Below, in pieces: positions 1,397 through 31,700 of a stretch of 64,000 nt of DNA; the stretch's first letter is position 1, and each line of letters starts with the position of its first letter. The notes below the pieces were generated by a model. The model saw only the letters and a program-made list of their open reading frames with translations. It had not been told where the DNA came from and ran no database searches. This stretch comes from Ruditapes philippinarum. Lineage: Eukaryota. The stretch spans positions 62,001 through 126,000 of the forward strand of contig NW_026852427.1 of the NCBI RefSeq assembly GCF_026571515.1, written 5' to 3'. The translations under genes were made by a program, and so were the position numbers.

Positions 1397-1473
1397 GTTG
1401 GTTTTTTGTTCAATGCTTCATATTAACTTATATAATTTACTTACTCTAGTTATTGTCTATATGTAGCAATAGT

Positions 1474-1770
1474 GGGGTGTCCGTGGCCGAGTTGTTAAGG
1501 TCGTTGATTTCAAACCAATTGCCCCTCTTCACTAGGGGTTCGAATCCCGACAGGAACGTTGGATTCTTTCATGTGAGGAATCTATCCAGCTAGCTTACGA
1601 AACGCCGGTGGTTTTACTTAGGAACAGAACAATGACAGAACAATCATGACAGAACAATCCAAGGAAGGGCACCGGAGGTCTTCCTCCACCAATAAATCTG
1701 AAATGTCGCCAAATGACCTATACTGTGTCGTCGTGACGTAAACCCAATCAAACAAACAATCAAACAAACA
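1474..1770 (+). mobile_element. tRNA-derived SINE (Meta-like core), (CAAA)n tail
   Basis: A box GTGGCCGAGTTGTTAAGG, B box GGTTCGAATCCC, body, tail AAACCCAATCAAACAAACAA; internal short triplication GACAGAACAAT at ~1624-1660. Confidence 0.85.
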
Positions 1771-1812
1771 TGAAGCAAAAGCTACGAAGTACTCTTTTGA
1801 TTTTTATCTTTA

Positions 1813-1935
1813 TTTGTTTGTTTTGTTTGGATTTTATGTCGCACCAAAAGTAAACAGTACAAGTCATATGGTGACTTTTTGTTTAAATTGTGGAGGAAGA
1901 CCTCGGCTACCACTCCGTGCATTATTTCAGAGACG
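1813..1935 (-). mobile_element. 3' half of a related SINE in inverted orientation
   Basis: GTGGAGGAAGACCTC is the reverse complement of GAGGTCTTCCTCCAC at ~1676; (TTTG)n tail on its left. Confidence 0.7.
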
Positions 1936-2065
1936 AGCCAAGATTCGATAATACCTTTAATTATTTACCGAAAGTCATGACTATATTGTTTCTTGTTTCT
2001 TTGTTTAGTTTCGAAGCATAAACAATCTTTTTATTCTCCCTGGAGGCAGTCCATCGCTCCCCTTC

Positions 2066-2345
2066 TCTTGTCCGGGACATAGCTCTAAAACTTCAAGAGG
2101 CATCATTAAGAAACTTTGTAGGTAGATAGGCCGTATTAAGTAGAGATGCAGTGCAAAAATTACTGTAACTCTGCCTTGCCTAATATTTGAGTGATTGTCC
2201 TTTGTTCATTTTTACAATTTAAACATTATCCGGGAAATAAAGTTTGTATGAAAAAAGATCTCATTAAGTAGAAGTGAAAGCATAGAAATCGTAACTCTGC
2301 CTTACCTTATATCAGAGTGATAGCCCTTTCTGTGTTACGGGCATT
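2066..2345. repeat. Fragment of satellite-like core repeats of a Helentron-type element
   Basis: TTGTCCGGGACATA.CTCTAAAA...GTAACTCTGCCTT unit shared with the array at 26381-27088. Confidence 0.65.
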
Positions 2346-3639
2346 CTTTATGATAAGATTTTCCTGTATATTTACCTCAAATTGACCTTTGCAAACTAAT
2401 GACCTGGATCTTGAATGTTTATTTAGTGGATTTTCATTTATTTTTGCTAAATGTAACTTGATAATTATTGAAAGGGTTATCTTCATACTTGGACAAAAAC
2501 ATTTTGGACAAGGTTTTCTTACACATTGAATTTCTTTCGACCTTGAGCTTTAAATGACATTGACCGTAAATATCGCATTATGGTTAAATTGTTATAATTC
2601 TGTTAGTTATGTACGTATTTGATTAATACTTGGACAAAACGAGGCTAGTTACAAAGCAAAGATATTGAATAATTGATATGCGACATTGTTCTGATATTGA
2701 CATTGTCCATCAATGTTAAATTAATGATTTTTATTTCTGTTACTGCCTAACTGGCTCTTATTTTACTATCTTTAAATGAATTACTTCTAGGGCTGGGGTG
2801 ATTATCCTAGAACTCGCATAGTCACAAATCAAAATGAAAAATCTAGTACGAACGAATATTTGTCAGTCCAGAGATCGTGGATCTTATTTTTTTATTACAC
2901 ATTCGCTGTTTCTCACACTTTCAAAGTATAAAAATACTATGTTTTATGTGACGTTTTCTTAAAAACAATTTGCGGGTTAAAGAGGGTTATCTGTTCTGTA
3001 CTAAAACAGACATTAAATTGGATTTTGCCATTCATGAAATGTGTATAAAACTTGACAACAGATTGTACTTGATCTTCAGAAATGTAGCACATTCAAGTTA
3101 AATATTCTTATTGCTATCATTTTTATTTCTGCTTTAATAGTCTTTGAAACATAGACCTGGAAGTGCACTTTGAAATGGTTCATCATTTTACATTGTGAGC
3201 TTTTTTGTTATATGAATTTTGGCCTACTTTCACTTTGGACAGACCTTGTGCTTGTGAAAACAAACATGGCTTACAAAGCAGAATCACCTTAAGTATAAAT
3301 TAAATCCGTTCATAAACTACATATTATGGCAATTTAACCAAAAATCATTATTTTTCCCTTGATGGACAAGGTCATTTATAGCTGAATGTCTATGTCAGTT
3401 CAATATTTTAGAAGGTCTTATCCAAAAGGTTGTTTTGTCCTAAAATGAAATGATACATTTCCGATAAACTTACCGAATTACAGCTTCTTATAGCAAATAT
3501 GAGTGAAAATGCAATAATTTGGGTAATATATGAGTAAAGATCAACTTGAAAACCCTGATCTTCAATTGTTGTGTCTAAAGTTATGAAGTCAATTGTGTGG
3601 ATTGTCGAATAATTTACGATCCGATTCGATCCACGATTC

Positions 3640-9318: not shown

Positions 9319-11534
9319 TTAAGATAAATGTAATGCTTTTTTGCTTTGGTGTACTTTCATGGGCAGCATTAGGGGCCTGCATCTATTCTATAATTGCTGA
9401 ATATAATATTTTGTTTCATAATTCAAACATAATGACTTAATTGTATGTTGAACTTGATTGATTTAAGGTATAAAAACATCAAAATTGTAAGTTTATGAAC
9501 ATGATGAGAGTCTATCTAGCGGTGATGTAAATCATTTTTGTCGCGATAAAAAGTTAAAAAAATGAGTTGCTGCTATTTCATGGCAATTACATGTATTACA
9601 TAAATTGACAACTTTGACAATTTAAAGACTGACATTTTATGTATGCTTTTTTTTACCTTGAACATAACAAATAAAATGAACCAGAAACCAAATAACAATA
9701 ATTAATATTTGGTGTACATATTTTCGCTTGAAATAGCATTTGATAATTACTATTGTTCATTTTAGGTTTTGTAATAGATATTTACCTTGGCTGATTTTTG
9801 TAGAAACAGCATATTAACTTAATTGTGTTTTAAAATGTGTGCGTACATGACAAGAGATAAGGTTGACTATAGATGAATCATTAATGAACCAATTCTGGAA
9901 CGATTCTGCTCACTGAACTGGGAATCTGAGCTATGACATCTATAGGGAAATAATATTACCCACAGATAGGTAATATTAATGATAACTGTCAGTTTGCAGG
10001 TTTTTTTTCTTTGGGGTGGGTGTTAGTGATCTGTATCTATACATATAAAATAGAACGGTAAATTTTATTTACGTGCCAGTTTTTGTAATAGAAAATGAAT
10101 ATAACACACATGCGCACGCACGCACGATTGTACATACAAAACAAAGCAATATTAAAAGTTGTCTTTACCATCGCAGTTTTCTTTAGTAGCAATCAGCAAA
10201 ATCCCTTGCCAAGCAGGAAGGCACATCTTATAAGGTAACCAATACTGTAAAAGGCAAACTTATACAATTCAACAAAATTTGTGAGTTCTACCAAGATATG
10301 CAAAAAAGTGATCTTAACCAACACTTATGATTCCTTCTATTATTCCCCTTAAAGTCGACGGGGGACAAGGTAGTAGTCTTCTTTCGTCCTTCCGTTCCAT
10401 CATTTAACTCTGGAGTAGAGCTGGATATGAACACTGGATATATCGCAGTTAGGAGGAATGCAATGAACAATGATATGCATCAATTTGAAGTAATTGTCCT
10501 TTGTTCAGTTTTTGCATAATTGTTAAGACAATAACTCATAAAGGATTAAAAAAATACTAAGGTTAGTTTGCAAGGACCATACCTCTAATATAATATCTCT
10601 TCTAACAATAACTCTAATATAATACCTCTTCTTACAACGAATAAATCGCCAAGGTGCACAACTACACAGATGCTGATCAACATTCCTGTAATGTACGTTT
10701 GCTCACAAGCCTAAGCATTGCGTTTTTTGGAGCTGAATGAGACATATCATAGACATTTCAACGCGTGGACGAACGTACAAGATGACAAAATCATATGTAA
10801 ATGCCAACCCCACCAGCACCCCCGCCCCCTTCCAGTGCAGGGACATAAAACATCCTTCTTACAATTATGTAGGATATACTGGTAAATTATGATTATACGG
10901 TCATCAGTACTGCACTGCTCAACTCTGTGCTGAATATAAGCGATAATATTTCCCTTAAAAACATTTTAGCTTCTTTTTTTAATATGTCAGTGTATCTTTT
11001 CAAAAGATATCTCTTGTTTCTCCTATACAGTTTTACGTCAGAGGAAAGTCTATTTTAAGATTGATGTCTATTACAGTTAGGCCAGTGCAAAGTTCCTTCC
11101 GTGCATTTCAAATTCATAATTTAGTAAAGACAGCAGCTGTACAAGCTGTCCAAAAACTTATCGTGATTTTATAAAATTCAGATAGAATCGATAAAAAAAT
11201 AAAGTGAGATGCTCTGCAAATACAACAATATGAGGTATTGTATTCTAAAAACATGTTATATGAGTTTAAATTAAATTAATTAGATCTGTTCGTCTGCTAC
11301 GTAAATTAGGAAGGTAGCAGACGAACACGTTTATTAAGGAAATCTGAAAAAGAAGAAGTTGTTGTTGTTGTTGTTGCTTGTTGATTTTATTTTTAATTTA
11401 GAGGATCTACAGTTTAAATTTATTTTGTTTTGATTTGAACCGTGCCGCTACTATAAATGTATTTATAAAAGCATGCGTTTTTTCTTGTATTTTCATAAAC
11501 ATCATAAATATATCTATTTTTCTTCTTTTTTCAG

Positions 11535-14167
11535 AACTGAAGGATGATCTTATTAAGTGGTACAACAAAAATCAGAGTACAGTTTCTCTTTCACCACTCA
11601 CAGATGAGTTCCCTACCCCTTTAGCTGGGTTCTACATTATGCCAGAAATTGACATACTGACTTATCTGCCAGGTGGAAGGAAAGAAACAACTAGAGTCAA
11701 GTCGTTAGAGGACCTGTTTACATTGGGTAGAAAAGTTCCACAGGAAATATACTTATCAGCAGCCGCTGGATTAGGGAAAACAGCATTTTCAAAATATCTC
11801 GCCTTGACATGGTGTCAAGCTCATCAAAAGGATGAAAATTATAAGCATTTTAAAGAAGAAGAGTTAAAGTCATTATCTGGCTTTGAGTTTTTATTTCTAG
11901 TACTATTGAGAGATTCAACTAAAGTATGTGATGTTGACGACATGATTGAACAACAAGTAATACAATACCTTCCTTGCTCATCGTCAATGCCAAAAGGTAT
12001 ATTAGAGAAAATTCTACGAGATGAAAAATGTCTTGTTATATTAGATGGACTTGATGAATGGACTCATCCTGACAATAACAAGTGTACAAAACTTCCTAAA
12101 AGTATTCCGCATCGATGTGCACGTGACAAATGTGTAATCTTAACAACATCTCGGCCATGGAAGCTTGGAATGACAAAATTTAATCACATAGTCGAAACAG
12201 TAGAGCTAGTTAAACTAAATAAAGACAATGCCTGGCAGTTTAAGTGTAATGCTATGAAAATGTTGAATGTGAAACTTCAAGATGGTGAACTGAATAATGA
12301 AGTGTATACATTTGAAGAAGCAATCAGCAACCATGGCCTTGAAGACATGGAATCCACCCCTCTCCTGTTACTCTATCTTATATGTTTATGGACTGAGAAA
12401 AAAATTCCAATAGGAAATGGCGCAGTAGAATTATATACACGCATTATTCAACTCCTTATATCCAGAACAAAAACGTTAAATGGAAAGTTTCATTCATCAT
12501 GTGAAAAGTCTCAGAGTTACATTCCTGATTGTTTCAGAAAACATCATCATTTCTGTAGTTACTGCAAGTTTCTGTTGACCATTGGGAAACTAGCTTTTTA
12601 TACATTGTTCAGTAAGAAAAAAGAGAGCAATTTAGTTTTTGATAAACATGATGCTGAAAAATATCTTAACCAAGAAGATTTGAAATCAAGCTGTCTATCA
12701 GGAATATTATCAGAAAGTAAAGTGAAAGCATTGATAAATGAAAGTTTTAAAATCTCTTTTTCACATAAAACAGTGCAGGAATACTTTTCAGCAATATGTA
12801 TAAGCTTTGAAAAAATAAATGAAGTTCAGAAAATCATATTTGAAGAGTGCAAAATTTTACAAAATATTCTAGAAATGTCAAAAGTGTTTGTCTTTATTAG
12901 TGGCATGAACCCTAAATTAATGTCTGCAATATCAAGTGATTTAATGCCTGTGATAAACAATGATAAAATAACAAGCAAATACAGAACTATGACAGATTAT
13001 GAGTACATGTACATTAAGCCATTAAAAGACATACAAGACATGTACATTTCTTGTAGCAAAGAAGGAAAGGAAAACAAAGACCATAAATTGTGTTTACAAG
13101 ATTTCATCATTAATGAAAAATGTCAACAAGAAAACTACTTCAAACAATTACAATATTTGTGTCAACAAAATAAAGAAGACATCAAATCAATAATGATACA
13201 AAATATGGGTATTTGTGGTCTACAAGAAGTTATTAATTTGTTTACACTTTCTGACCATCCACATATAGAGAAATTATTCTATCAAGGTGAAATTGTAGAA
13301 GAGGAAATAATTAGCTTGTTATTGAACCCTTTAAAATGTTTAACTGTGGTATCATGTAAATGGGAAAATCATCAATTTTTAGAAGAATATTGCCAGCTGT
13401 CTGCAGATCGGATAAATGGAGGACTAGTAAAATTACAACACCTGGAGTGTTTATGTATAAGCTATTTCACTATGACCCACGAGGTAATGGAGACATTGTT
13501 AAATTTCCTCACTAGTAAAAAATCAATGAAAGAAATAATAGTGTACGGTTTAAACTGTAGTGATCATGATACTTCATGTAGGGGATTCAACCTTGACCTG
13601 TCTCAACATTCACAACTAAGACGTTTAGGATTGAACTGTATACCTGTGTCACAATTAAACATGGATGTATCGTTGTTAGAGGAAGGTGGTGTAGGTAAAT
13701 TATATAAACCTGGTGTTGTGTCATCTTATCTCAGTCAACTACCAGCAGCCAGTAAACTACAAACATTTAGGTGTAGTGATCTAAAATCTTCCAGTGACAT
13801 AGAAACAATGTTACAAACATTACCATTGTTATATCATGTGAAATATGTACAGTTGTTTAGTATGAATCTAGGTGAAAGATCATTAACACTGACACCTCAA
13901 ATGATCAATATTGAACGCGTTGACTTGGAGGATATAACAATGTCTTGTTCAATGTTACATGAGCTTATTACTGTTATAAACAAACTACCACATACAGTGA
14001 CAGTATATATGCAAGGTTGTGATATAAAACCAGAAACAGAATTTGAAAACTTTAAAACATTTATAAAACAATCAGACAATTTTGTGGTCATCAGTGATGG
14101 CACCTTGAAGTCTGGAGAGTACCTGTTTAAGTTTATAACAACAACAAGACTGAGTAACCTTAAATGA
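11535..14167 (+). CDS. NACHT NTPase + winged helix + degenerate LRR region; last coding exon of an NLR-like protein
   Basis: ORF 11435..14167; acceptor tttcttcttttttcAG ends at 11534; Walker A AAAGLGKT, Walker B CLVILDGLDEW, sensor-1 VILTTSRP, TPLLL motif, winged-helix FSHKTVQEYFSA, LxxLxL-like C-terminal repeats. Confidence 0.92.
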
Positions 14168-15739
14168 ACTTGGGAGAAACAATTTATAAATAGATTATGA
14201 GACAAGTGACAGGTGAAATAGACATCATTTTTTATTATTATTCAAATATTTACTGCAGTGGATAGATAAGGAAAAGTTTGAAATATGTACACATAATTAG
14301 ACAACTTGGACTATTTTCTGGAAGTGCTATAGATGGACTGATGTTTCTGGATATAAAAAGTAAGTTATCTTTTATTTATTTTAATATTCTTTATATATTA
14401 GTATTATTTTGAACTTGGCGAAACAATATTTTTTATAAGTCTATAATCGTTTTTTAATATTTAAGTGTCAGACATTTAGAAGTCTTTATTCTTCAAGAAT
14501 AAACTAGATTACTATATGTGTGTAGTTGTGTCTTACTTGCATATTATACACTTCATAAATTAATAATGAAATAATATCTTTATTTGCGCTTGAAAATTAT
14601 TTCATTTCTTCACCATGGCATGATATATTTTAATGGGAATCAAACTTTGAAGAATTTACTAAAATAGGTATTCAATGTCAATTTAACATTTTCTCCATGG
14701 GCATATTGTGAAAAATGGCCGTTTTCATTGAAAAGCCTCCTGTTACAACGTCAAGTTCAAGCTGCTACAAACTATGACAAATGCTTCCAAAACTGATGAA
14801 ACTTGGCAAAAATGTTGACTGGACCATGTCCTCTGTAACAGCATATTCAGTCTAACATTTCCTGTTACCATGGTAACGGGGAAATGACTCAAAATTGCCA
14901 AAAATCACTCTTTTGCATTGTTTATTTTTCCATCAAAACTGATTTCAAAGTGCTGCAACTTCCAAATGAATTGAGATGGAGTGAAAGGCTTTACAGCATT
15001 GGTAACATGTTACCTTACGATCCAAAATTTTCTTGACGATGTGTGGGGCTGCCACCCCTGCATACTCTGAAACAAAAGGGGCACACACCCCTTCTTGCAA
15101 CCTCTTGATGAACCTTTTTTATTGGGGGCGGCACCGAAAATGTGATCAAAAATGGGGTCAAAAAGCCGTCAAATCACGTCTATATGAGGTAAAGGATTAA
15201 ACAATTACTTTTAAAGCCCATTTCACCCTGGATGAACAAGTTTTTTCACGTGACCACAAATGCAAACGCCGATTTTACATTTCAGCAATTACGGACCCGA
15301 TTTCAGGTAATTATTTGAAGATATCTTTTTTTCTACTGCATCCAAAAATTATGACCAAGACCTTAGGACCCGGCGTTCATTGAGCTTTTATTTTATGTAT
15401 GTAGTTATTGCGAGGCTTCTGTGATTTTTTAGAACACTTCGACACAAATTTTCTTTTTGGTAGGCAAACGCCGATAAGTTTTACCTTTTCTAATCTTTTT
15501 TGTTCACTGGACACCTATGTTGAGGGAAAATAATAGAAGATATATGTTTTTTACAAGTAATTTTCGTACCTAACTTATTCATAATTTTATTAGCAATGTT
15601 ATATTCGAGATAAACCCATGTTTTTCACTTGTTGTCGATTTTGCAAACGGCGTTTGATTATGTAAAATGAAAATGGGCAAACGTCGGTTGGTCATTTGAA
15701 ATATATGCAATCACCCGTTGATGTCTGTTTGAACGCTGA

Positions 15740-16830
15740 ACTATATTTGTCTCATTTCCAGAGTTCTTCATCATATTAAACAATTTCATTGCAAACTGAT
15801 TCTAATAACATTCTGGCCACTACGCCCAAGGTTTCCAGATTTATTGAATCTGTCGGAAGCTCATCCGTTATGTCTTCCATTGGTTACAAACGTGTTACAA
15901 CAACCAAAATCTCAGATATGTCATTCAAATCCAGGTGTTCTGAAATTGACTGCATGGTTGCTATCGACAGACAGTTTAGAGAAAAAGGTTTTTTCCAAAC
16001 TTCTTACAACCAGCTTGAGAACTGGTACTCAGAAAGATTACTCCAGTAAATTAAGACAATTTATGATATGGTGTCGTCAAAAGAATATTGATTCCTTCAC
16101 AGCATTCTTAAATACTTGTGCTGAGCTTTTATCAGATTTGTGCAATAAAGGTTTACAGTAGGTTACCGCTCTATTTTATCTGCAGTTTTACCTCCAGTAG
16201 ATAGCACACCTATTGGTCAACATCCGTTTGCTATCAGATAATTAAAAGATTCAATTTAAAGAACTCCTGTAACAAAGTTGTTGCCTGAATGGGATTTGCC
16301 TAAAGTTCTTAGTTCACTACAAACATTTCCTTTTGAACCTTTGAGAAAAACATCAATTGAATTTTTAACATATAAAGTTGTTTTTCTTACAGCTATCACG
16401 ACATTCAGGGGAGCCAGCCACCTTCAAGCGTTAACATTAAGAGGATCTATTTCTGTGAAGGCAGATGGGGAAACTTTTAGCACTAAACAGGATAGACCTG
16501 GTCATTCATCAGCAAAAATTTTTGTACCAGCTTTTAAGACCATCCAAGAAGAGCATTTGCTATCTATCTTAAGAGAACTAAATCCTTCAGACGTAAAGAT
16601 TAAACAAGTTTATTTCTGACAAATAATGTACCTCATTCTAAAGCTTTTTCACAAACTTTGGCTTCATATGTTCTTAAAACTATTTAAGAGGCTTATGAAG
16701 ATAAACATAAAAACGAAACAGCACATTCTAGAAGAGCTTTAGGTCCAAATTCTCAACGCTGCAGATTGGTCAAAAGAAAACACCTTCGTTTAATTTTATT
16801 TGAAACAAGTAACTCCAAGTGATCTCAATG
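15740..16830 (+). pseudogene. Decayed DIRS-type retroelement fragment: methyltransferase-like pol C-terminus overlapping a tyrosine recombinase
   Basis: ICLISRVL..LILI..WP.RP.FPDLLNL...LKLTAWLLS (DIRS MT-like); TQKDYSSKLRQFMIWC, GYRSILS, IGQHP, WDLPKVL...PFEPL, LTYKVVFLTAITTFR, AHS.R, AADWSKENTF (DIRS YR); multiple stops and frameshifts. Confidence 0.85.
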
Positions 16831-17111
16831 TGTAGTTCAACGTCGCTGTATAGTTCAACCTAAGAAGATGGATTTTTTTCTACATTTTTAAATCAAAGTT
16901 TATTCCCGACGGATTTTGTGTGGAATTGATTTTTGAGAAGATTATATGGTTGTATGTATACATGTAGGGCCTATATATGGGATATACAGAAGTTTTATAA
17001 AAGTTTGTTATTCAAGAAGAAGAATGTTTTAAAATATAAAAGGAGAAAAGAGAGAAGTCTTTTGTTCAGAGAATTGTAATATTTGCAACTTGACTTACAT
17101 AACCACCGGTT

Positions 17112-17921
17112 TATAAGAATCTTACACCGGCTGCCGGTACAGACCGGAATATCTGTCGAGTTTCCGCTTAATAGTTTCCTGAGAGCTAGATATTCCCGTC
17201 TGTACCAACAGCCGGTGTTTGATTCTTTTTCTTGCATATTACATGTCAAATATTTTCGGAACAGAAATTATGAAAACTGATGTATATATATCGCACTTTT
17301 TTCTTATAGTAGCGTATGAAAATACAACTTCATTCATAAAGGAAAAATGACGTCATCCTAAGAACGCGATTCATTCATTAAAGGCGCGTGTCAATGACGT
17401 CATTTAAAGCACGCAACTAGTCTTACGTGGGGGTGTAAGACAGAGATTTCCAGCACCGGTGTAAACGGTAGATTATAAGAATCTTACACCGGCTGTCGGT
17501 ACAGACCGGAATATCTAGCTCGAGGGTAACTGTTTACAGCGGTGACGAGGCTCTGCCGAGTTTCCGCTAAACATGCAGTTACCAGAGAGCTAGATATTCC
17601 CGTCTGTACTGACAGCCGGTGTTTGATTCTTTTTCTTGCATGTTACATGTCAATTATTTTCGGAACAGAAATTATGAAAATTGATATTCTCATTACGCAC
17701 GTTTTTCTTATAGTAGCGTATGAACATACAACTTCATTTATAACGGAAAAATGACGTCATTTTAAGACCGCGATTCATTCATAAAAGGCGTGCATCATTG
17801 ACGTAATTTAAAGCACGCGACTTGTCTTACATGGGGATGTAAGACAGAGTTTTCCAGCACCGGTGTAAACGGTAGATAATCCTGTCTGAGATGCAAGAAA
17901 ATCCTGTCTGAGATGCAAGAA
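17112..17921. mobile_element. Tandem pair of hairpin-containing nonautonomous elements (Crypton-like)
   Basis: Direct repeat units 17112-17473 and 17474-17877; long hairpin ACACCGGCTG...GATATT...CAGCCGGTGT centred on GAGGCTCTGCCGAG; TTCTTGCAT/ATGCAAGAA inverted pair. The Crypton label is inference. Confidence 0.65.
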
Positions 17922-19822
17922 ATATTATATATCTAATATGTTCAACCGGCGTTTGCATATTTTACATGTTCAAACGACGTTTGCAAATTAGACAATACGG
18001 GGAATGACATGGGATTACGTCAAATATAACTTTGTTAATGGAATTATAAATGAGTTAGGGACGGGAATGGCATGTAAATGACATATCCTCTATTATTTTA
18101 CCTCAACGTGTATTTCCAGTGAAAAAAAAATCGTAAGAAAAAGTAAAACCTATCGGCGTTTGCTTTGCGAAAAAAACATTTGTGTCGAAGTGTTCTAAAA
18201 AACTACTAAAGTCTAGTAATGACTACTCACATAATATAAAAGCTTAATTTACGCCGGGTCCTACGGTCTATGTCTTATTTTTGTGCTCGCATTGGGAAAA
18301 AAAGATATCTGCAAATATTTGCTGAAATGTTAAATCGGCGTTTGCATTTGCGGTCACGTGACAAAACTTGTTCATCCAGGGTGCATTTGAAGAATTTATA
18401 AGAGGTTGGGCAGTTTAGCTCAATTCCTTTATGAGGGGTGGATTCTGGGCCTGGGTGAAAATAATTGAATCTTAACCTAACCATGTGGTTCAAAAAAATT
18501 TACCAAATTACAAATTTCTACATTCTTCCGGACATTTTAAGACTTTTACCGGTGCAAGGCTGTCACATACTATACTATACTTGGTATAAATAACTGTACA
18601 TGACTGTGCATGTAAATATGTCATTTCGTCCTGACTGCAAACATGAAATAATATCCTAAGTAAAAACATGCACTGGAAATTATTTTATTTTTCCCATTAT
18701 ATTTTAATTGGGGGTCAAACTTTTAAGAATAAACTGAAATAGATTTACATTCCATATCAATTTAATCAATAATTTATCAGGTCAAGTCTGTTGGGAAGAT
18801 TTATTTTTTAGATTTTTAAAGGGGGTGGGTTAGGTTTCTTTCGGAGGGATGGGGTATGTGGGTAAATACGTCCTCCACAGGAATATTAATAAATTTTCAT
18901 ATTAAATGATGGCTTCTGGTAATTTTCAGGTACAAATTTTAATGCAAGTTTTCCCCCAAAAATGTTCAGACTTTAACAAATGCAAAGCTGACTACTATTT
19001 TATATAAATAAGAATAATTTCTGTTCAATTTGCATTTCTAAGCCCTTATGGAATGCCAATTGGCTTATCATATAAATGTAATACATCTATGTTCAAGTTG
19101 TCACTATTATTTATATCTAAATAAAAGAATATTTGAACCACAATAAGGCACTGCAAAATTTATTGCTGGCCAATTGAATATCTTTAGCCCTCATACACAT
19201 GGAGGCGGTGGCCCAGTGGTTTAAAAATGTGACCAACGTGATGAATAATTTAAATATAACCTTGATCTGTAAATGACCATGACTGTTAAGGTAAACAATA
19301 GTCTAATATAACTAATTATATTGTGTGCAAGAAAATGATATTTTTAGGTTAGTGATATTAACACAATATTCTTTCGCTGATGGTTTTGACTGTCCTATTC
19401 GTCTAAAATGCTATGTCTAAAATGTTGATAATTAATAGACAAATATTTCTTTCTATATTTCAGATCATCCTCCCAGCCTACTTCAATGTTTATCAGCAGA
19501 CACAATTCCAATTTGCTAGACACTATATCAATGAGGTGATATCTTTACAATCCTGAAAGAGAAGAGTTATAACATTATAACTTCACAGTTCCATCAACCA
19601 TCATTGGAAATAAATTAAATGTCATACATCACTTATTCATGTTAACTACCAAACAACGCATATAAATCAACTGTTTATTAATGCTAAGTCTGAGCATTTT
19701 TCAAACTGGATTGTCATTATCTTTAAGTACTTTGCTAACAAGGAATTATTTGTGATTAACCTTTGATGAACACCTAGCTCAAGTTTAAAAACTGTTGTCA
19801 CCATATATTGTAATTGCTTTAA

Positions 19823-22879: not shown

Positions 22880-24070
22880 AGAAAATGCTAAGAGTAAGGA
22901 ACTTCAAACTGTGTATGAGGGTTGCTCATCCCCTATTGATTTTGGGTCAATGGGGTCCTTGTAAGCAAAAACAGTTTACGATCCATAACTTGAAAACCCA
23001 TGGGCTGCTAGCCCTCAGTCTTTGTAGGTACATTTATTTTGGCACGTAGATGAATCCTATTGATACTATGATCTAGGGGTCAAATGCCAAGATCATATTG
23101 TATGTATTCCGATCAATAAATTGACAAACCATGGGTTTTGGCCCTCAAATGTCATAGGACTGGGTACATTGTAGATGACACCTATTGATTTTGATGTCAA
23201 GGGTCAAAGGTCAAGGTTACACTGACCTTGTAGGTAAAAACAGTTTCCGATCAATAACTTGACAACCCATGGGCTGTTGGCCCTTAAACTTTGTAGGTAG
23301 ATTTGTCTTGGTAGATGACCCCTATTGATTTTGGGGTCAATAGGTCAAAGGTCAAGATCATATTGACCTTGTAGGTAAAATATACGATCAATAACATGAC
23401 AACCCTTGGCATTTAGCCCTCAAACTGCAAAGGTCCATTTGTCTTGGCCAGTATGTCAAGGTCACATTGACCCTGTAAGTCAAACGGTTTCCTATCAATA
23501 GCTGAACAATTCATGGACCATTGGCCTTCAAACTGTACTGATGCATTGCGTTTGGTCAGAAGGATATTTGGGGTCAATAGGCCAGAGGTTCAGATCACAT
23601 AAACCTTTAAGGTAAAAACGCCTTTTGATCAGAATTCCAACACCTCAGTTGCCCTTAACCTTCAAACTTTACAGGTACATTGGCCTTGACAAGTAGACAA
23701 CCCCTATTGATTTAAGGGTCAAAGGTCATAGTTACATTAACATTGTACGTAGTAAAGGTTTCTGACCAATAACTCAACAACTCAAGTTGCCTTGGTTGAT
23801 ATTTATTCAAACTAAAAATACTTCTGGTATATTAAGAAGGCCTACATGATTCATAAAATATATGCATATATTTTTTGGTAAGATTTGTGATAAATGTGTC
23901 ATAAAATTGCTGCACACAACCTTTACGGTTACAATTACGCTATGACTAGTTATGACAGTAGATAATAATTGTTTGGTCACTAGGTCAAAAGTCAACATAA
24001 CATCCCAATAACCTGATCACATGACTAATTGGCTGCCAATAGGGGCATACATGTTTTACAAACATAGCAT
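22880..24070 (+). mobile_element. Second copy of the 7200-8335 Helentron/HINE-type family
   Basis: Same core units and same tail (CTGACCAATAACTCAACAAC...ATAGGGGCATACAT). Confidence 0.75.
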
Positions 24071-26380
24071 GTTGATATATATTTAAGACAATAGAATATT
24101 ATACATGTATCATTGTTACATATATCTTAGACAGTGTTATCAACGCATGGTTACAAGAATGGACAATTTACAAGTACCAATATTTTTTTCAGTTTTGTTA
24201 TGTTGAATGATATTCAAGCAGACAGATAATACAAAAATTAAATTCACTCATTTTAGACATATATTCAGAATGTGAAAATATCAATAGCAATTGCCACTGC
24301 ACAATTTATTTTATGTAATTGATAGTAAAATTTCTTTGTTCTTAAGAGGTCATATTCGCATGCCTTGAGGGATTCCGATATAACTTGGCACAAATGTTTT
24401 CCATTGTAGAGCAGTGTCGCCTGTTAAATTCAGGTACCTGCAGTCAAGGTCAAGGTCACACATATAGGTCAAAGTAAAAGTATAAAATATGAAGATTTGT
24501 TTAAAGACTATTAAGTCACCATTTATTTGCCCCCCCTCCCACACACACACACACACCCAAGAAGAGGAGGTTTATTATTTTGTCATTGTCAGCCAGTCTG
24601 TCGGTCCATCAGTCATATCTCCTACACGCATGAAGGGATTCTAATGATGACACAAAATTGAAAAATGTCACAAAATACCATTTTCAGTTTATTTCTGAGT
24701 ATATTTGTTTTTTTGTTTGAATTTTTTTTGCCATTTTTCTGTTCTCATGTTATAATATAACAAAATTTGCATTTTTTTCCTAAATTATTTTCCATTATGA
24801 AAATTGTGATGTCATGAAATAATATGCAAGACTATTCCCTTTATGACCTTTTTATTGTATCATTGTCATTTTTTCTATACCATTTTAAAATCAACTGGAT
24901 ACTGGGAAATAACATAAGTGAGGCGTTATTTTCCGCTAGAAATTCCTTAAAGTACCCATTTTACCCTTTTGCGCAAATTCAATATATTTTTATTTATATT
25001 TTGTATTTTTGCAAACAGGTTAAAATAGATCAGATGTGATGTCATAAATCATTAAAAATTACTTCTCCGTTCAATGTAGAATGTAAAATTATTTATTAGC
25101 AAACTAGAATGATAATAGATATTATTTTATCTTATGTTGAAGTATCTAATGTATGTTTTTACGTTCAAATGTTTTACTTTTAGTCACTTTATATACCGTG
25201 AGTTTGGTATATTTTACATATTAAGATAAATCAGTCTATTCAACTTAAACTGATGTTTGGAATGCATTTGTACTATATAATGCAGCTGATGACATGTTTT
25301 AGCAAATAAGAGAACTGAAAATAGTAGCAGTAGATCTACAGTAATTGAATTTTTTTATTGTCATGTACACGTTATGATGGGAAAGTTTTATCATTTCACA
25401 TTATCCATTTGAAGGTATGACCACCCCCACCCATGCAGTATCTCCGCTTTGGAGAGAAGTCAAGAAGACTATAACTACTGTCAACTGCATTGAAACTCTC
25501 GGAGAGGCACCGGTTCAAACCCCAGAAGAGGCTTTTTTAACTCCTTTTTTATTTTAACATCATTTAAGTGTCTCTCTGGTCACATTTTGAAAGAAAAATG
25601 TGTGTCTTATTAGATATCTAATAGTATTGGTTCAGTTATGTCGAATTTTATATAAACTATGGATTTTTTCAAAGTCTTATAAGCATTCTTAACAATGTTC
25701 AATAGGAAATCAATTTTTAATAATGATGATAAAATAGATTATTTAGAGTTTTTATTTTTGAAAATAAAAACCTTCTAATTGCCATGAAAAAAATATATAA
25801 AAAATCCCATGTTAACTTTGTACAGGTGTCCTTTAAGGTATATTTAACGGACCTCTATTGCCAATTTTACAGTTAATACCTTAATTTTTGTCATTATTAA
25901 CCATTAATTATTAAAGGGAAGTAAGTGATATAAATAGTTGTTAAGTTACTTGAGTTATTATGTTTGTTTGAAACATATGAATAAAAATTGTTACTGCAAT
26001 AAGCACTACATATAATTATGTACATTTATGTTTAATTGTACAATTATTATGATTGGATCCTTTACAAGAAATAAAATGATATGAATACAAGTAAATGTTT
26101 GTTTTACTATTATGTTTGATAAACAGACAGGCACACACACTTATGTATTGTTTGATTTCACAAATACAAGATAACAATCTTAATTCGCTATTACAAGCTA
26201 TGGTCAATACGTGAGCTCGTTTGAAATATTGGGACACTTAACTTGCATTTCTCATTGAGTTTGATTTGAAAAATAAAATCTTTATAGTTGTTTGTTTTGA
26301 AGAAGGTGATAGCAATTCTGTCAAAAGTCCGACTGCTAATAGTAGCGTGATTAAATGGCAAACGTGTGTGTGTATTTGAG

Positions 26381-27088
26381 TTTATTATGCTTCCCATAGT
26401 CGCCCCTTTGTCCGTCCGCTTAACTTTAGAACAACAAGAGGTATCAATACGAAACTTTGTAGGTAGATATATCTCATTGAGTAGTTGTGCAGCGCACAAG
26501 AACCGTAAATCTGCCTTGCCTCATTTCTGAATTATTGCCCTTTGTTTACTTTTACACTTTGACTTTTGTCCGGGACATAACTCTAAAATTATAAGAGGTA
26601 TCAACATGAAGGTAGATAGATCTTATTGAGTAGGTGAGATCTTATTGAGTAGGTGTGCAGTGCACAAAAACCTTAACTTTGCCGTGCCAATTTTTTGAAT
26701 TATCGCCCTTTGTTTATTTTTACACTTTGAACATTGTCTGGGACATAACTCTAAAATTATAAGAGATATCAATATGACACTTTGTAGGTAGATAGATCTT
26801 TTTGAATAGAACTGCAATGCTAAAGAACCTAAACACAGCCTTGTCGAATTTTGGAGTTATTGCCCTTTGTTTATGTTTACACTTTGAGTTTTACCTGAGA
26901 CATAATCTGAAACTATAAGAGATATCATCACGAAACTTTATAGATAGATCTCATTGAATAGAAGTGCAGTGCAAAACACCATAACTCTGCCTTGCTTAAT
27001 TTTGAATTTTTACCCTTTGTTCATTTTTATACTTTCCTGTGTCCAAAACCTTCACGGGGAGCAACACCCGGTTCAACCGGTTCTTGTT
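26381..27088 (+). mobile_element. Helentron/HINE-type element with ~155-bp core repeats
   Basis: Begins TTTATTATGCTTCCC..GTCCGTCCG; tandem units; ends GGGGAGCA...CCGGTTCAACCGG (hairpin) TTCTTGTT. Confidence 0.75.
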
Positions 27089-27089
27089 G

Positions 27090-27364
27090 ATACTCGCCAC
27101 CGGTCCCACATATCGGACAGTCCTCCAGAAGAGTATAAGTCATTTGATATGTTGGAGGATAGTGCAAACTACAGCAAGACGTCCCAATACTAGAGGCTTC
27201 TCTTAGTTATTTAGCATGCTGAGTGTTTAAGCACTCATACACGGGACATCGATTTAAAGTCTTATCCGGAAGAATGAATATACTTTTAGTTGGCAAGCCT
27301 GGGAATCGAACCCACTTGGTCGAGATCACATGTCTCGCGCTTTAACTGATTGAACTTTGCGGGG
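27090..27364 (-). mobile_element. tRNA-derived SINE with V-domain-like core
   Basis: Minus strand: degenerate A box, B box GGTTCGATTCCC, then GGATAAGACTTTAAATCGATGTCCCGTG resembling the V-SINE core. Confidence 0.65.
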
Positions 27365-27576
27365 TACAAACGGCAAAACAGTCATAAAAGCGATTTGTAT
27401 AGCTAGAAATGGAACGAGGCAATGAAGCAGACTATCAAATGTGTAATAGGGTATTCCTGTATGAGGTGTGTGTATGCAGCCAACCCTCAGAATCTTTTTG
27501 ACAAAACTTTTTATGGTCTGCTTGTAATATGATTTAATTTTGTTTAATGCTCATAAAATTTGTTCACAATGCTCGT

Positions 27577-28768
27577 TTTTAGCTCGACTATACAAAAGTA
27601 TGTGGAGAGCTGGCGTACTCGCCCCGGCGTCGGCGTCTATGTCCTCGTCTAGATTTCAGATTAAAGTTTTGGTGCAGTAAAATATTTTTCACTATAACTT
27701 TGTCATTTCTTAAGGTATGAACTTCAAACTTCAAATATATGTTCCTTATTATCAACCACATCTTATGTGAAACGGTTTATAACTATAGCACCAATATTTT
27801 CTGATTAATCTCCCCTTGAACTTTTTTCCTTGAAAACTACTGTTTTTTCTGTAACTTCTTTATTTTTTAAGGGATAAACTTCATGCTTCAAATATATTTT
27901 TCTTATCATCAACCGCATCTTATATGACAAGGTTCATAACTCTAGCACCAATATTTTTAGATTTATCTCCCCTTAAACTTAAATTTTTTCTTAAAAAATA
28001 CTATTTTTTACTGTTACTTCTTTATTTCTTAAGGGATCAACTTTATATTTCAAGTATATGTAACTTATCATCAACCACATGTTATGTGACAAAGTTCATA
28101 GCTCTGGCACCAATATTGTTATACTTATCTCCACTTGAAAACTTAGAATTTTCCTTAAAAAATATTGTTTTTTAACTGCTACTTATTTTTTTTAAGGGAT
28201 CAACTTTATACTTAAAAAATATGTACCTTATCATTAACCACATGTTATGTGACAAGGTTCATAACTCTAGCACCAATATTGCAAGATTATCTCCTTATCA
28301 TTTTAGATTATTTTACTTGAAACATGTTATTTTTTATTATAACTTTTTTCTAGTTTTAAAGCTATCTACCTCAAACTTCAAATACTTATTTCTTATCATC
28401 AATTACATTTTATGTGACAAGTTTCATAACTCTTGAAGCAATATTTACAGATTGATCTCTCTTTTAACTTAGGATTTTCTTTAAAAAAATATTATATATT
28501 ATAACTTATTTACTTTTTAAGAAATCTACTTCAAATATATATTTCTTATCATTACACAGATGTTGTGTGACAAGGTTCATAACTCTAATGTGACTTTTTC
28601 CAGAATTATTCCCCTTGATCTTGGAACTTATGTTAACAATGTTATTTTTTTACTATAACTTAATACATAATTATACATAATTGATTTTTTTCTTTATAGT
28701 TTTGTCTTCCTTACTTCTTCCAGTATTTTATTAGTCGAGTTTCGCTGTCTCCTGTGACAGCTCTTGTT
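27577..28768 (+). mobile_element. Complete Helentron/HINE-type element with ~160-bp core repeats (about 6)
   Basis: Subterminal inverted repeat CTCGACTA (~27582) / TAGTCGAG (~28732), 3' hairpin GCTGTC..GACAGC, T-rich ends, GGCGTC microsatellite. Confidence 0.85.
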
Positions 28769-31700
28769 GTACACCTAGTCACAAAACACAATCACGATCA
28801 GAACAGTCACAAAACACAATAAAATTGTGTCGTAGGACTGCCAAACAGGCAGTTATCAATATGTGTACTGAATGCAAATGACAAAGCCAGCTCTACAAAC
28901 ACATTACAGAAGTTAAAAGGTTTTGGAAAAAATATCATTATATTCTCGGATCATGACTAAACAACTGTCTTAAGAACTTAGTAAGAGGTGACGAAAATGA
29001 AGTAGAAATTGGAAATGAGCTACATTTAACTTGCGTCACATAACGTAATTACAACGCTGGAGCATGATTTCCATGAAAAGATTTAAAATGTATTTTTAAA
29101 AAAAAAAAAACATTGTCAAATTAACAAAGAAAATCACACGGAGCTTTCAAACCCACGCAAATTACCCCAAAAAAGTGCAAATATAGTCCTTGATCTTCAC
29201 GCACAAGAAATATTGTGATAAATACTGCAAAATCAGTCATTAATTGCATTCAACTTTTCAATTATGACTTGAATTGTATTAGTTCTTTCTTAAAGTTTAG
29301 TACAATCATTATTCTCATATTTGATTTACTTGATGTAGTTTTACTCATATGGGACATGCAGTTTTATGTATTCTTGATTATAGACTAAAATTTCCTGTTT
29401 TCATTTAAAATGTTTGTTAACTTCTGCAGATACAGTTATTTAAAAGATGTTTATTCATTTGTTCTAAACAATTACCTGTATGTCATATTTTTAAATTAAT
29501 ATCAACGATGTTAAAACACAGCTTTATTTATACCTACTAAAATGCCGAATCATTAAATCAACTTTTTAAACAAATTAATACTTTAAGTCATTAATTCCGA
29601 TTGGAATGCAAATGTATTTTAGATTTCATGTAAATTTTATGATTAACGTACAAATAATACATACAAATATACTTCCGTCAATGACAAACGTTTCATTATT
29701 TTTACTGAAACATTTATTAATACGTTCTTCTGCTCTCTTTACTCTTTCATTTCCGGGTACTTTACCGGTGCGGATGGTTTATACCTGGGGTTAAATAGGT
29801 AATATAAATAAGTTTTACAACAGAATCAAATACATATAGTTAAAAGTATCCATTATGTTAAAAAAACAGCTAAATATTCTCTGAATAGATTCTATGATAA
29901 AATAGATTTTCTGGATTGTAAAGTGACATTGGCTTTTTCTATACAGAGAAAGTTTTGATCTAAAAATTTGAGTTATAACAAGTTAAACAAGTTTATTTAC
30001 ATTTTCGCAGGTCATAGACCCATGTGGCACAATATGCAAAATATACATTATGGCAAACGTGCATCAATTTTAAAGTGACATGATCACGTACATGCATTAT
30101 AGTAGCACATTTTACATAGGACATGGAAACATATATTCACCTATTACATGATGTAATAATTCACATTTTCGTCGTATGTGTCAAAAGTATATATGCAACA
30201 TAAGATTGTGTACTGACTTTACATATTAGACGAGATCTATCACTAGTGAAGTAGATAATTTGACAGATTAAAATCTTTCTCAACTGAATATTGAATTTAA
30301 ATCATGTTGATAACGAAAGTGTGAATTTAATATAAACTTTTCATACTGCATACACCATTTTCGACTATAGTAACATTTAAAAATTTAATTGTGCATGGGA
30401 GATAATTGCTATGGTCTTATCGCTCGATCTGGATATCGAGTTATGTAACATCCGCCGCACTATAGTTTTAACAATATATTGACATTCAATATAATTTCTT
30501 AACATAATTAACTGCAGTTATCTAGTAAAATGGAACAAAGATGTAAAATATTTATAAATCATATAAAGATTATGAATCATTGTATAACTAACTCATACAT
30601 TTGCAAAGCGAGATAACTCTCAAGTATATAAATAAGATATTATCGTAGTTGGTACGTTCCCTTGCATTGTGCCTATTGCTACTACATAATTACTTGAATA
30701 TCTTTTTTCTACTCGGACAAAACAGCTTACGTCAGATACAAAGAAGACAATACGCCCAAAATATGTATATTAACGCCATTTTGATGGTAACTATTAACAA
30801 CGATAGGTCATCAAGGTTTTTTTTTAAAATATACTTTGTATGATCAACAAATATTATTTTTCTACTAAACTTTTTTAAGTAAACATATCTAAGTGGACTA
30901 TTTTGTCCTACAACCTTTTGCTGAGACTCTTCTATTGTGTAATGTTAATCGGCCACGTACAAATTAAGCCTACCGTAAATAATATATGAGAACATTTTTA
31001 TACATTACATTATACTGAAGGGTCTATTTCATTACCAGATTTATGTTTAGGCTCTACGCTGCTATCTCCCCCATTTGGCTGAAAATTAATTGACATATCA
31101 TATTTAATAATATAATTATGACATATGATCTAAAATGTTATAAATATATAACCTTCCATCTTTTCATAAGCATGTTCCGTCGTTTGATTTAGTTGTGCTT
31201 TTAATAATTCCATCGCGATTTATTTCTGAATTTAAAATAGCATTCTGCTCTTCGGGATTATTCGGTATTTACAATTCTAGTTTTTCACATGAAACGAATG
31301 TCGACCTAAATGGCACCCCAAGCTTGTCATGCAAAAAGGGACAAAAGACGAATGTGTAAAAATTAACATGCACTATGGAAATCTCTTATTAAAACAATTT
31401 CATGCACATGCAATTAAATACAATCAAAACCACAATTCTTTCAAAATGTGTTACTTTATCCGTTTAATTGCCGAATTCGTTTTAAAAATTGTTGAAACAT
31501 CTTGTGAAAATTTACGAGTTCTCATTATAATAGATTTTGTTTACACCATATTTATAGTCTTCGACGCAGCGTAATAAACTCTTAATAACTGCATACAATT
31601 CATTGATGTTCGCAGATCTCATGGAATGAATAATGTTGTCGAGTTTACACCCCATTCATTTCTGCTGCTGTACTTGTATACGTTTACCGAATGCAGCTGT

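What the first reader, a model, noticed from the sequence alone, without database searches (positions are those of the whole stretch)
15219..18388. Transib/RAG-like transposon shell carrying a tyrosine-recombinase cargo beside an NLR gene
Seen: perfect 21-bp terminal inverted repeats starting CACCCTG, exact 5-bp TSD CATTT, ~460-bp imperfect inverted arms, and no transposase inside. The interior holds a DIRS methyltransferase/tyrosine-recombinase fragment that starts just after the left arm. Known: CAC termini plus a 5-bp TSD are hallmarks of Transib and RAG-like transposons (RSS heptamer CACAGTG; here 5/7 match, no nonamer seen). Inference: a Pack-type element of the RAG-ancestor superfamily that has moved a foreign recombinase sequence, a chimera of two unrelated recombination systems. 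The cargo is pseudogenised in this copy.
Basis: partly seen in the sequence, partly recalled or inferred. Interest (0 to 1): 0.8.

Follow-up and report, generated by a model that had tools for sequence, protein, structure and literature searches.

The report
Clam transposon carrying a retroelement scrap
This is one of roughly eighty copies of a small cut-and-paste transposon in a bivalve genome; its ends and 5-base target duplications look like the Transib/RAG family, its middle is a dead fragment of another mobile element, and the enzyme that moves it has not been found.

Summary
Window 15224-18383 is bounded by a perfect 21-bp inverted repeat starting CACCCTG (94% over 68 bp). It is flanked by an exact CATTT duplication and has ~480-bp inverted arms. 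No ORF exceeds 113 aa and none of the three interior ORFs scanned has a transposase match.

It is one copy of a mobile family. There are 158 termini in the 1.41-Gb genome, against 0 for the control pattern. All 8 full copies examined have exact 5-bp TSDs of different sequence. Homology drops exactly at CAC in 30 copies.

The interior is shared by the family:
- A 1.33-kb internal piece of a DIRS-like retroelement: RT/RNase H tail, the tyrosine-recombinase ORF and 235 bp downstream. It is 84% identical to a young genomic DIRS family.
- Two tandem hairpin-bearing repeat units.

All 26 family matches in that search end at the same DIRS position. Three frame-breaking deletions are shared by most copies, so there was one acquisition and the cargo was already dead before amplification.

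CAC ends plus 5-bp TSDs point to a Transib/RAG-like transposase, but no partner was found. The only RAG1-like genes found belong to two RAGL transposon families with different ends.

Verdict: a new member of a known kind, of modest interest. First readers of this scan noted what looks like another copy (s1-804256).

The parts
15219..15223 (.). Left target-site duplication, CATTT
   Evidence: It is identical to 18384-18388. Seven other copies have their own exact 5-bp TSDs.
15224..15291 (+). Left terminal inverted repeat. The first 21 nt are perfect and start CACCCTG; 68 nt are 94% complementary to the right end.
   Evidence: (I2). Conservation among 30 copies drops from above 0.9 to about 0.4-0.5 exactly outside the CAC.
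15224..15706 (+). Left subterminal arm, about 483 bp and about 77% complementary to the right arm. It holds 4 copies of the motif GCAAACGCCGAT at 15262, 15464, 15643 and 15677.
   Evidence: Nine of the 10 window matches to the motif lie in the two arms; 1.57 are expected by chance for the whole window.
15745..17077 (+). Internal fragment of a DIRS-like retroelement. It comprises the last ~110 codons of the RT/RNase H ORF, the tyrosine-recombinase ORF region (about 15831-16835, broken by stops and frameshifts) and about 240 bp downstream.
   Evidence: It is 84% identical over 1442 alignment columns to L064 1141-2568. The parent has RNase H domains. Its YR ORF has bivalve homologues carrying PF00589. 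One search shows the broken frames.
17080..17880 (+). Two tandem units (about 362 and 404 bp) of a hairpin-bearing repeat. The hairpins lie at 17115-17227 and 17477-17631.
   Evidence: D1, D3, I3, I7. DNA folds of -32.5 and -52.9 kcal/mol, z -9.0 and -13.9; 2931 first-look candidates genome-wide, and the unit number varies between copies.
17874..17917 (+). A 22-bp direct repeat in two copies, between the tandem array and the right arm.
   Evidence: D9.
17927..18383 (-). Right subterminal arm and terminal inverted repeat (TIR at 18316-18383). It holds 4 inverted copies of the motif at 17945, 17973, 18152 and 18334.
18384..18388 (.). Right target-site duplication, CATTT

Best explanation
Window 15224-18383 is one copy of a non-autonomous cut-and-paste DNA transposon family. 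The family has at least about 80 copies in this 1.41-Gb bivalve genome.

Shown:
- The element has 68-bp near-perfect terminal inverted repeats starting CAC.
- It has ~480-bp inverted arms, each with four mirrored copies of a 12-nt motif. These are probably transposase-binding sites.
- It has exact 5-bp target duplications.
- Insertion sites are AT-rich and often flanked c...g.
- The middle encodes no transposase. It is filler made of an internal 1.33-kb piece of a DIRS-like retroelement and a variable number of hairpin-repeat units.
- The filler was acquired once, already broken, before the family amplified. Arms and cargo have diverged equally.

Inferred:
- The family is moved in trans by a RAG1-type DDE transposase (Transib or RAG-like), which cuts at the CAC ends and makes a 5-bp staggered target cut.
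- The filler most likely entered by faulty gap repair with template switching after an excision. The same process would produce the internal-deletion derivatives seen in the family.
- The recombinase fragment has no function.
For: Mobility:
- 158 termini against 0 for the control pattern.
- 8 of 8 full copies have different, exact 5-bp TSDs.
- Homology drops exactly at the CAC in 30 copies.

Whole-unit mobilisation:
- L033 aligns at 95% from end to end.
- 21 of 29 end loci run unbroken through at least the first ~1470 bp; 7 are deletion or insertion variants and 1 is a right end. All 29 carry DIRS-derived sequence.
- Of 26 family matches, 25 stop at DIRS query position 235 and one at 231. Eight DIRS copies run on to 659-768.
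- Median pairwise distance is 0.063 in the arms and 0.061 in the cargo.

Dead cargo:
- Shared deletions of 13, 13 and 35 nt in at least 80% of 21 copies.
- Among matches above 70% identity, which apart from one DIRS parent (C13429, 954 aa) I take to be family copies, open frames are at most ~225 aa. The parent YR ORF has about 368 aa.

Superfamily:
- Kapitonov & Jurka 2005 (PMC1131882, passages) state that Transib is the only eukaryotic DNA transposon superfamily with 5-bp TSDs, and that CAC is invariant in its ends. They also report c-TSD-g flanks in two mosquito families.
- Here C sits at position -6 in 15 of 30 ends.
- The genome does host RAG1-type transposons with 5-bp TSDs.

Binding-site motif: 9 of 10 window matches fall in the arms at mirrored offsets.
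Against: - No autonomous partner was found. PF12940 gave 14 candidates at 7 loci. None has these ends or arms within about 9 kb.
- Those loci form two RAGL families. Their ends start CACTAACAAAGTT and CACACTATTTAC and share only CAC with this element.
- The heptamer matches the Transib and RSS consensus at only 5 of 7 positions. The best nonamer-like stretch is 6 of 9 at a 25-bp spacing, which is not convincing.
- Both ends are alike, so there is no 12/23 asymmetry.
- The 5 nt next to the ends are 15% GC. Transib is described as preferring GC-rich targets.
- An ORF-based survey found only one Transib transposase across molluscs (PMC10294476, passage).
One 1.8-kb sample from the middle of one of them is non-coding.
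- The capture mechanism is inferred, not shown.
Confidence: 0.65

Rival explanations
1. The family belongs to a different or undescribed DDE transposon superfamily that also makes 5-bp duplications. The CAC start is coincidental.
For: - No RAG1-like gene carries these ends.
- The heptamer matches at only 5 of 7 positions and there is no clear nonamer.
- Targets are AT-rich, unlike the GC-rich preference described for Transib.
- Long arms with reiterated subterminal motifs are, from my recollection, more typical of hAT, CACTA or P-type elements.
- Transib transposases are nearly absent from mollusc surveys.
Against: - A 5-bp TSD was exact in 8 of 8 copies. The 2005 paper calls this unique to Transib.
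- From recollection, hAT makes 8-bp and CACTA/Chapaev 2-4-bp duplications.
- RAG1-type transposons with 5-bp TSDs are present in this genome.
Confidence: 0.2
2. The superfamily is the same, but the cargo arose differently. A complete DIRS element, and separately a hairpin repeat, inserted into an empty ~1-kb foldback element. Deletions then trimmed the DIRS on both sides before the composite amplified. No capture by repair synthesis was involved.
For: - Nested insertions are common in this repeat-rich genome. Insertion variants are seen in L008 and L018.
- The family readily suffers internal deletions.
- Both DIRS borders are internal to the retroelement, which either route can produce.
Against: - It needs at least two independent deletions that spared both arms.
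- None of the 29 end loci lacks DIRS-derived sequence or carries a longer DIRS piece.
- No pre-capture empty form was seen among the 31 end-pairs. However, only 8 of the 31 pairs (7 other copies plus the window) were read from end to end.
Confidence: 0.35
3. The element is a DIRS-derived non-autonomous retroelement. Its inverted arms would be DIRS-type inverted terminal repeats, moved by a tyrosine recombinase.
For: - It contains DIRS sequence and has long inverted ends.
- The parent DIRS has inverted terminal repeats.
Against: - The element's arms show no similarity to the DIRS parent. Only 15745-17077 aligns.
- Both borders of the DIRS piece are internal to the retroelement.
- Exact 5-bp TSDs in 8 of 8 copies. 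From recollection, DIRS integration makes none.
Confidence: 0.02
4. The copies arose by segmental duplication, not by transposition.
For: None specific.
Against: - Flanks differ between copies.
- Similarity stops exactly at the ends in 30 copies.
- Each copy has its own 5-bp duplication.
Confidence: 0.01

Closest known systems
Non-autonomous Transib elements (Transib-N families of insects; Kapitonov & Jurka 2005, PMC1131882, passages read)
   Same: - CAC...GTG ends and 5-bp TSDs.
- No transposase inside, and many more copies than any autonomous element.
- A c...g tendency around the duplicated target.
   Different: - The heptamer is CACCCTG rather than CACAATG, with no convincing A-rich nonamer.
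- The inverted repeat is much longer (68 bp) and sits on ~480-bp arms with reiterated motifs.
- Targets are AT-rich.
- No matching transposase is known.
- The host is a bivalve.
RAG-like (RAGL) transposons of protostomes and their non-autonomous derivatives (Martin et al. 2020, PMC7204232, passages read)
   Same: - A mollusc host, CAC ends and invariably 5-bp TSDs.
- Two RAGL families are present in this same genome.
   Different: - The published protostome end consensus, CACTWMCAAACKTYKBB, fits the RAGL copies found here but not this element, which shares only CAC.
- No sequence similarity exists between this element's arms and the RAGL loci.
Pack-TYPE transposons of plants (Pack-MULE, Pack-CACTA; PMC8903248 and PMC6379663, search listing and abstract starts only)
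   Same: A non-autonomous inverted-repeat element that picked up foreign DNA between its ends and multiplied it.
   Different: - Pack-TYPE elements carry fragments of host genes. Here the filler is other mobile or repeated DNA and is non-functional.
- The host is an animal and the superfamily is different.
DIRS retrotransposons (source of the cargo)
   Same: The cargo is 84% identical to a genomic element with an RT-RNase H ORF, an overlapping tyrosine-recombinase ORF and inverted terminal repeats.
   Different: Only an internal 1.33-kb piece is present, without either DIRS end. The composite moves with TSDs, which from recollection DIRS elements do not make.

Membership tests
Transib / RAG-like DNA transposon superfamily | 5-bp target-site duplication | tested here: met
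   8 of 8 full copies have exact 5-bp TSDs, all of different sequence. The defining status comes from PMC1131882.
Transib / RAG-like DNA transposon superfamily | Ends begin 5'-CAC | tested here: met
   The first 21 nt of the end, starting CAC, recur at 158 places with at most 1 mismatch. Conservation across the end is 0.9 or more in the 30 aligned copies.
Transib / RAG-like DNA transposon superfamily | RSS-like end: a conserved heptamer, a 12- or 23-bp spacer and an A-rich nonamer | tested here: inconclusive
   The heptamer matches CACAATG and CACAGTG at 5 of 7 positions. The best nonamer-like stretch (ACAAATGCA) is 6 of 9 at a 25-bp spacing. Both ends are alike (consensus).
Transib / RAG-like DNA transposon superfamily | The same ends flank a RAG1-core (DDE) transposase in an autonomous relative | tested here: not met
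   14 PF12940 candidates at 7 loci; none has these ends or arms within about 9 kb. They are RAGL families with other ends. The search is limited: the long end-pairs were not read, and the Pfam model may miss distant Transib transposases.
Protostome RAGL non-autonomous element | End fits CACTWMCAAACKTYKBB, or the ends of a resident RAGL | tested here: not met
   Only CAC is shared with the published consensus and with the two resident RAGL families.
Pack-TYPE transposon | Non-autonomous inverted-repeat element whose captured interior is mobilised with it | tested here: met
   The same interior and the same junctions occur in other copies.
Pack-TYPE transposon | The captured DNA is a fragment of a host gene | tested here: not met
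   The interior is a DIRS retroelement piece plus a repeat with 2931 genomic candidates.
DIRS retrotransposon (as the mobile unit) | DIRS terminal repeats at the ends, and integration without a TSD | tested here: not met
   The arms are unrelated to the DIRS parent. The DIRS end lies about 426 bp beyond the captured piece. TSDs are present in 8 of 8 copies. The 'no TSD' feature is recalled, not tested.
hAT superfamily | 8-bp target-site duplication | tested here: not met
   The duplication cannot be extended beyond 5 bp in any of the 8 copies. The 8-bp rule is quoted in PMC1131882.

The most novel reading that the evidence does not exclude
This bivalve has a working, or recently working, RAG1-type transposition system with broader reach than its recognisable RAGL copies suggest. 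Either its RAG1L/RAG2L-type enzymes tolerate very different ends, or an unseen Transib-like transposase exists in a phylum where surveys found almost none.

That system would have spread this ~80-copy family. It may also have spread the many other CAC/5-bp families that first readers noted in this genome. A contig in one public run stops matching exactly at this copy's right TSD, which hints that the insertion may still be polymorphic. If so, these elements would be natural substrates for studying end recognition by RAG ancestors in a protostome.
Probability: 0.2. Interest if true: 0.55.

Novelty: new member of a known kind. Interest (0 to 1): 0.3.

Why it matters
The element itself is a routine composite: a non-autonomous DNA transposon padded with dead pieces of other repeats. 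Its recombinase fragment never worked in this context.

Its modest value is as a marker. An ~80-copy family with CAC ends and strict 5-bp duplications shows that RAG1-type cut-and-paste transposition has been productive in a bivalve. Two RAG-like transposon families in the same genome point the same way. ORF-based surveys report almost no Transib transposases in this phylum.

Matching such families to the enzyme that moves them would show how strictly RAG ancestors read their DNA ends. For annotation, the family should be masked as one unit, so that its recombinase remnant is not called as a gene next to the NACHT gene.

Tried and rejected
Autonomous partner
- PF12940 in the own genome gave 14 candidates at 7 loci. 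I fetched about 20 kb around each.
- None contains the end within 2 mismatches of its first 14 nt, apart from one chance-like hit. None contains the arms. The only similarity is one hairpin-repeat unit near C11460.
- A scan for CAC ends with 5-bp TSDs found ends for RAGL family 1 only. The family-2 end was read from a homology drop.
- PF03089 (RAG2) gave nothing anywhere, including the controls, so that result is uninformative.

Long end-pairs
- The pairs are C3 13.1 kb, C1001 7.3 kb, C12377 7.2 kb, C996 5.6 kb and C9697 5.0 kb. They could not be read in full.
- A 1.8-kb sample from the middle of C12377 is AT-rich with no ORF over 93 aa.
- From the coordinates, the extra length in C996 and C9697 lies in the tandem-array half. 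In C1001 and C12377 it lies left of the DIRS piece. Its nature is unknown.

Empty site
- No paralogous empty site was found. The left-flank repeat ends about 24 bp before the insertion, and the right flank is unique.
- Contigs of four runs were laid on the locus. One X13 contig aligns to 18384-18962 and stops exactly at the TSD, with 98 letters unplaced. No joint across the element was among the 15 of 285 joints shown. This is a hint only.

Other checks
- A metagenome scan for the 21-mer found 0 matches.
- Findings look-ups by sequence were blank. Per the operators, that means nothing.
- I recalled a resemblance to the ends of an active insect Transib. A search for that heptamer together with 'Transib' found 0 papers, so I do not use it.

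Literature on a Transib carrying captured DNA
- Searches found nothing on point.
- Repbase and Dfam are not available here, so I cannot say the family is undeposited.
- Supplements were not opened. Figure S4 of PMC1131882 and the additional files of PMC7204232 list ends and could bear on this.

Rejected readings: hAT or CACTA membership, DIRS-type mobilisation and segmental duplication. See the rival explanations.

Full report
**The observation**

- The 21-mer CACCCTGGATGAACAAGTTTT lies at 15224-15244. Its exact reverse complement lies at 18363-18383.
- The inverted repeat continues to 68 nt at 94%.
- CATTT flanks both sides, at 15219-15223 and 18384-18388.
- The first ~483 bp and the last ~457 bp are about 77% complementary.
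- No ORF in the element exceeds 113 aa. Of the three interior ORFs scanned against Pfam, one gave two sub-threshold hits (Phage_int_SAM_4, E 0.014, and TPR_Rlf, E 0.035) and none matched a transposase.
- A 910-aa ORF with a NACHT domain ends about 1 kb upstream, at 11435-14167.

**It is a mobile family**

The window is C914:62001-126000 of a 1.41-Gb assembly in 15,874 contigs.
- The 21-mer with up to 1 mismatch occurs 82 times forward and 76 times reverse. The reversed control pattern occurs 0 and 0 times.
- Among the first 100 places listed I could pair 31 elements on single contigs. Fourteen are 3.0-3.5 kb, three are 4.0-4.4 kb, eight are 2.3-2.5 kb, one is 1.3 kb and five are 5-13 kb.
- I read seven other copies from end to end (L031-L036, L063). 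With the window copy, 8 of 8 have an exact 5-bp duplication, each of different sequence: CATTT, ATCTT, CCAAG, TTACA, CCTTG, AACTT, TTAAA and TTATT. None can be extended to 8 bp.
- In an alignment of 30 copies, conservation falls from above 0.9 to about 0.4-0.5 exactly outside the CAC.
- The 5 nt next to 30 ends are 15% GC, against 33% for the window. C sits at position -6 in 15 of 30 ends. In the 8 full copies, G follows the right TSD in 4. This suggests a loosely palindromic c-WWWWW-g target.
- Contigs of four public runs from four studies of one organism cover the element.

**The arms**

The motif GCAAACGCCGAT, with up to 2 mismatches, occurs 10 times in the 64-kb window. Chance predicts 1.57.
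- Nine of the ten matches lie in the two arms.
- There are four sites per arm, in inverted orientation.
- The offsets from the two ends mirror each other: 38, 240, 419 and 453 against 38, 220, 399 and 427.

I take these to be transposase-binding sites. That is an inference.

**The interior**

Translation shows a broken tyrosine-recombinase reading frame. A search of the genome with its longest piece found a near relative (82% identical) inside a long open frame at C13429. That locus (L064) has these features:
- a 460-aa ORF with RNase H domains of reverse transcriptases (PF17917, E 1.9e-8);
- an overlapping frame that encodes the recombinase;
- recombinase homologues in Mytilus, Mercenaria, Crassostrea, Pinctada and Solemya, several carrying PF00589 or annotated as Tyr recombinase or core-binding domain.

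At DNA level, window 15745-17077 equals L064 1141-2568 at 84%. That span is the last ~110 codons of the RT/RNase H ORF, the whole recombinase region and 235 bp downstream.

The retroelement itself runs about 426 bp further, to a terminal inverted-repeat structure. It has an inverted copy of its end about 4.5-6.6 kb upstream in four of the copies. Eight copies match L064 at 83-100%, four of them at 97% or more. Both borders of the captured piece are therefore internal to a DIRS-like element. The 'methyltransferase' label could not be confirmed.

Downstream of the DIRS piece, 17080-17880 holds two tandem units (about 362 and 404 bp). Each contains a long hairpin (DNA folds z -9.0 and -13.9). The unit has 2931 first-look candidates in the genome, of which only 40 were scored. 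Its number per element varies from 2 to at least 3, which explains most of the length classes between 3.1 and 4.4 kb.

**One capture, dead on arrival**

Other copies share the entire interior.
- L033 aligns at 95% over element positions 6-3165.
- Of 29 end loci, 21 are collinear through at least the first ~1470 bp. Seven are internal-deletion or insertion variants of the same structure: 471^833 twice, 722^1481, 823^2641, 989^1777 and two with inserts. One is a right end. All 29 contain DIRS-derived sequence. These loci were the best matches to the terminal 68 nt, so they are not a random sample.
- In one search, 25 of 26 family matches stop at DIRS query position 235 and one at 231. The eight DIRS copies run on.
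- Median pairwise distance is 0.063 in the arms (positions 69-488) and 0.061 in the cargo. The cargo mean is inflated by the deletion variants, which I did not remove there.
- Relative to the DIRS parent, deletions of 13, 13 and 35 nt are shared by at least 80% of 21 collinear copies. Nine loci were left out as variants or right ends. A 42-nt 'deletion' at the end of that alignment is an artefact of where my sequences stop.
- Among the matches above 70% identity, every frame is at most ~225 aa except the DIRS parent at C13429 (954 aa). I take the rest to be family copies, though membership was confirmed only for those whose coordinates fall within end-pairs.

**Which enzyme moves it**

Kapitonov & Jurka 2005 (passages) state three relevant points:
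- Transib is the only eukaryotic DNA transposon superfamily with 5-bp TSDs.
- CAC is invariant in its ends.
- The end consensus is CACAATG, a 23-bp spacer and AAAAAAATC.

Martin et al. 2020 (passages) report invariably 5-bp TSDs and CAC ends for protostome RAG-like transposons, with the consensus CACTWMCAAACKTYKBB.

This element meets the TSD and CAC criteria. Its heptamer fits at only 5 of 7 positions and it has no convincing nonamer.

I could not link it to a transposase.
- PF12940 finds 14 candidates at 7 loci. None has these ends or arms.
- The seven loci form two families. Family 1 (C7606, C11980, C11460) is 9-10 kb with 13-bp ends CACTAACAAAGTT and TSDs AACTG and TATTG.
- Family 2 (C4313, C12925, C8870, C15024) has an end that reads CACACTATTTAC.
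- Both families encode RAG1-like proteins with a RING finger.
- A survey of molluscs found a single Transib transposase ORF (PMC10294476, passage).

The assignment to a RAG1-type enzyme is therefore a structural inference, which I hold at about 0.65.

**How the cargo got in**

This was not tested. I favour template switching during gap repair after an excision, for two reasons. The interior juxtaposes two unrelated repeats with internal borders. The family also shows the internal deletions that such repair produces. Nested insertion followed by two deletions remains a serious rival.

**Polymorphism**

Polymorphism is only hinted at. In run X13, one 1242-nt contig matches 18384-18962 and 19026-19383. 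It stops matching exactly at the first base of the right TSD, with 98 letters unplaced (table 8). No joint spanning the element was among those shown.

**Comparison and verdict**

This is a non-autonomous element of the Transib/RAG-like structural type in a bivalve. Its filler comes from other repeats, so it is Pack-like in mechanism but not in cargo. It is not a functional fusion of two recombination systems.
- At least eight other notes, out of 32 that mention Transib, describe CAC/5-bp elements here.
- One follow-up note calls the organism the Manila clam (s1-813813). I did not verify the species beyond the bivalve homologues.
- Searches found no paper describing this family or a Transib with captured DNA. 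Repbase, Dfam and the paper supplements were not available.

Novelty: a new member of a known kind. Interest: 0.3.

Noticed in passing
L050/L057 (G000:C7606:255170-265091); also C11980:46048-55065 and C11460 around 23700-34100: A 9-10-kb RAG-like (RAGL) transposon family.
- 13-bp ends CACTAACAAAGTT that largely fit the published protostome RAGL consensus.
- 5-bp TSDs AACTG and TATTG.
- A RAG1-like gene with a RING finger and the RAG1 core (PF12940, up to 243 bits).
- A convergent 340-aa Kelch+PHD ORF, like RAG2L.
- Two copies are about 98% identical, and the RAG1-like frames carry stops in the copies seen.
The main text of PMC7204232 does not mention clams.
   Followed up: partly
G000:C4313:~203900-216566, C12925, C8870 (two inverted partial copies), C15024: A second, larger RAG1-like family, also with a RING finger. 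One end reads CACACTATTTAC, and a ~165-bp tandem array lies near the other side. Copies are 91-99% alike and carry many stops.
   Followed up: partly
window 17080-17880; also e.g. G000:C4135:299842-300437, C13156:108038-108863, L056 ~18797-19133 of the C11460 region: The ~400-bp unit with a 40-56-nt-arm hairpin is a very abundant repeat on its own (2931 first-look candidates). It occurs outside this transposon family. It may relate to the hairpin-ended elements of note s1-813813; I did not test this.
   Followed up: partly
L064 = G000:C13429:5200-8300 (element about C13429:2990-8193): A young DIRS-like retroelement family. Eight copies match at 83-100%, four of them at 97% or more. It has an RT-RNase H ORF overlapping a ~368-aa tyrosine-recombinase ORF, ~150-bp inverted terminal repeats and a perfect 60-nt inverted repeat at its right end.
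   Followed up: partly
window 14568-15083: Summed contig depth in four public runs is 50,000-260,000 here, against 2-20 in the unique flanks. This marks a very high-copy repeat just left of the element. It ends about 24 bp before the insertion site.
   Followed up: no
window 14591-14686 and 18674-18765: Short stretches on the two sides of the element resemble each other in direct orientation (77-88% identity, spacing about 4080 bp, D5, D16, D17). Unexplained.
   Followed up: no
window 11435-14167: A 910-aa open frame with a NACHT domain (29.4 bits, cut-off 26.7). It ends about 1 kb upstream of the element.
   Followed up: partly
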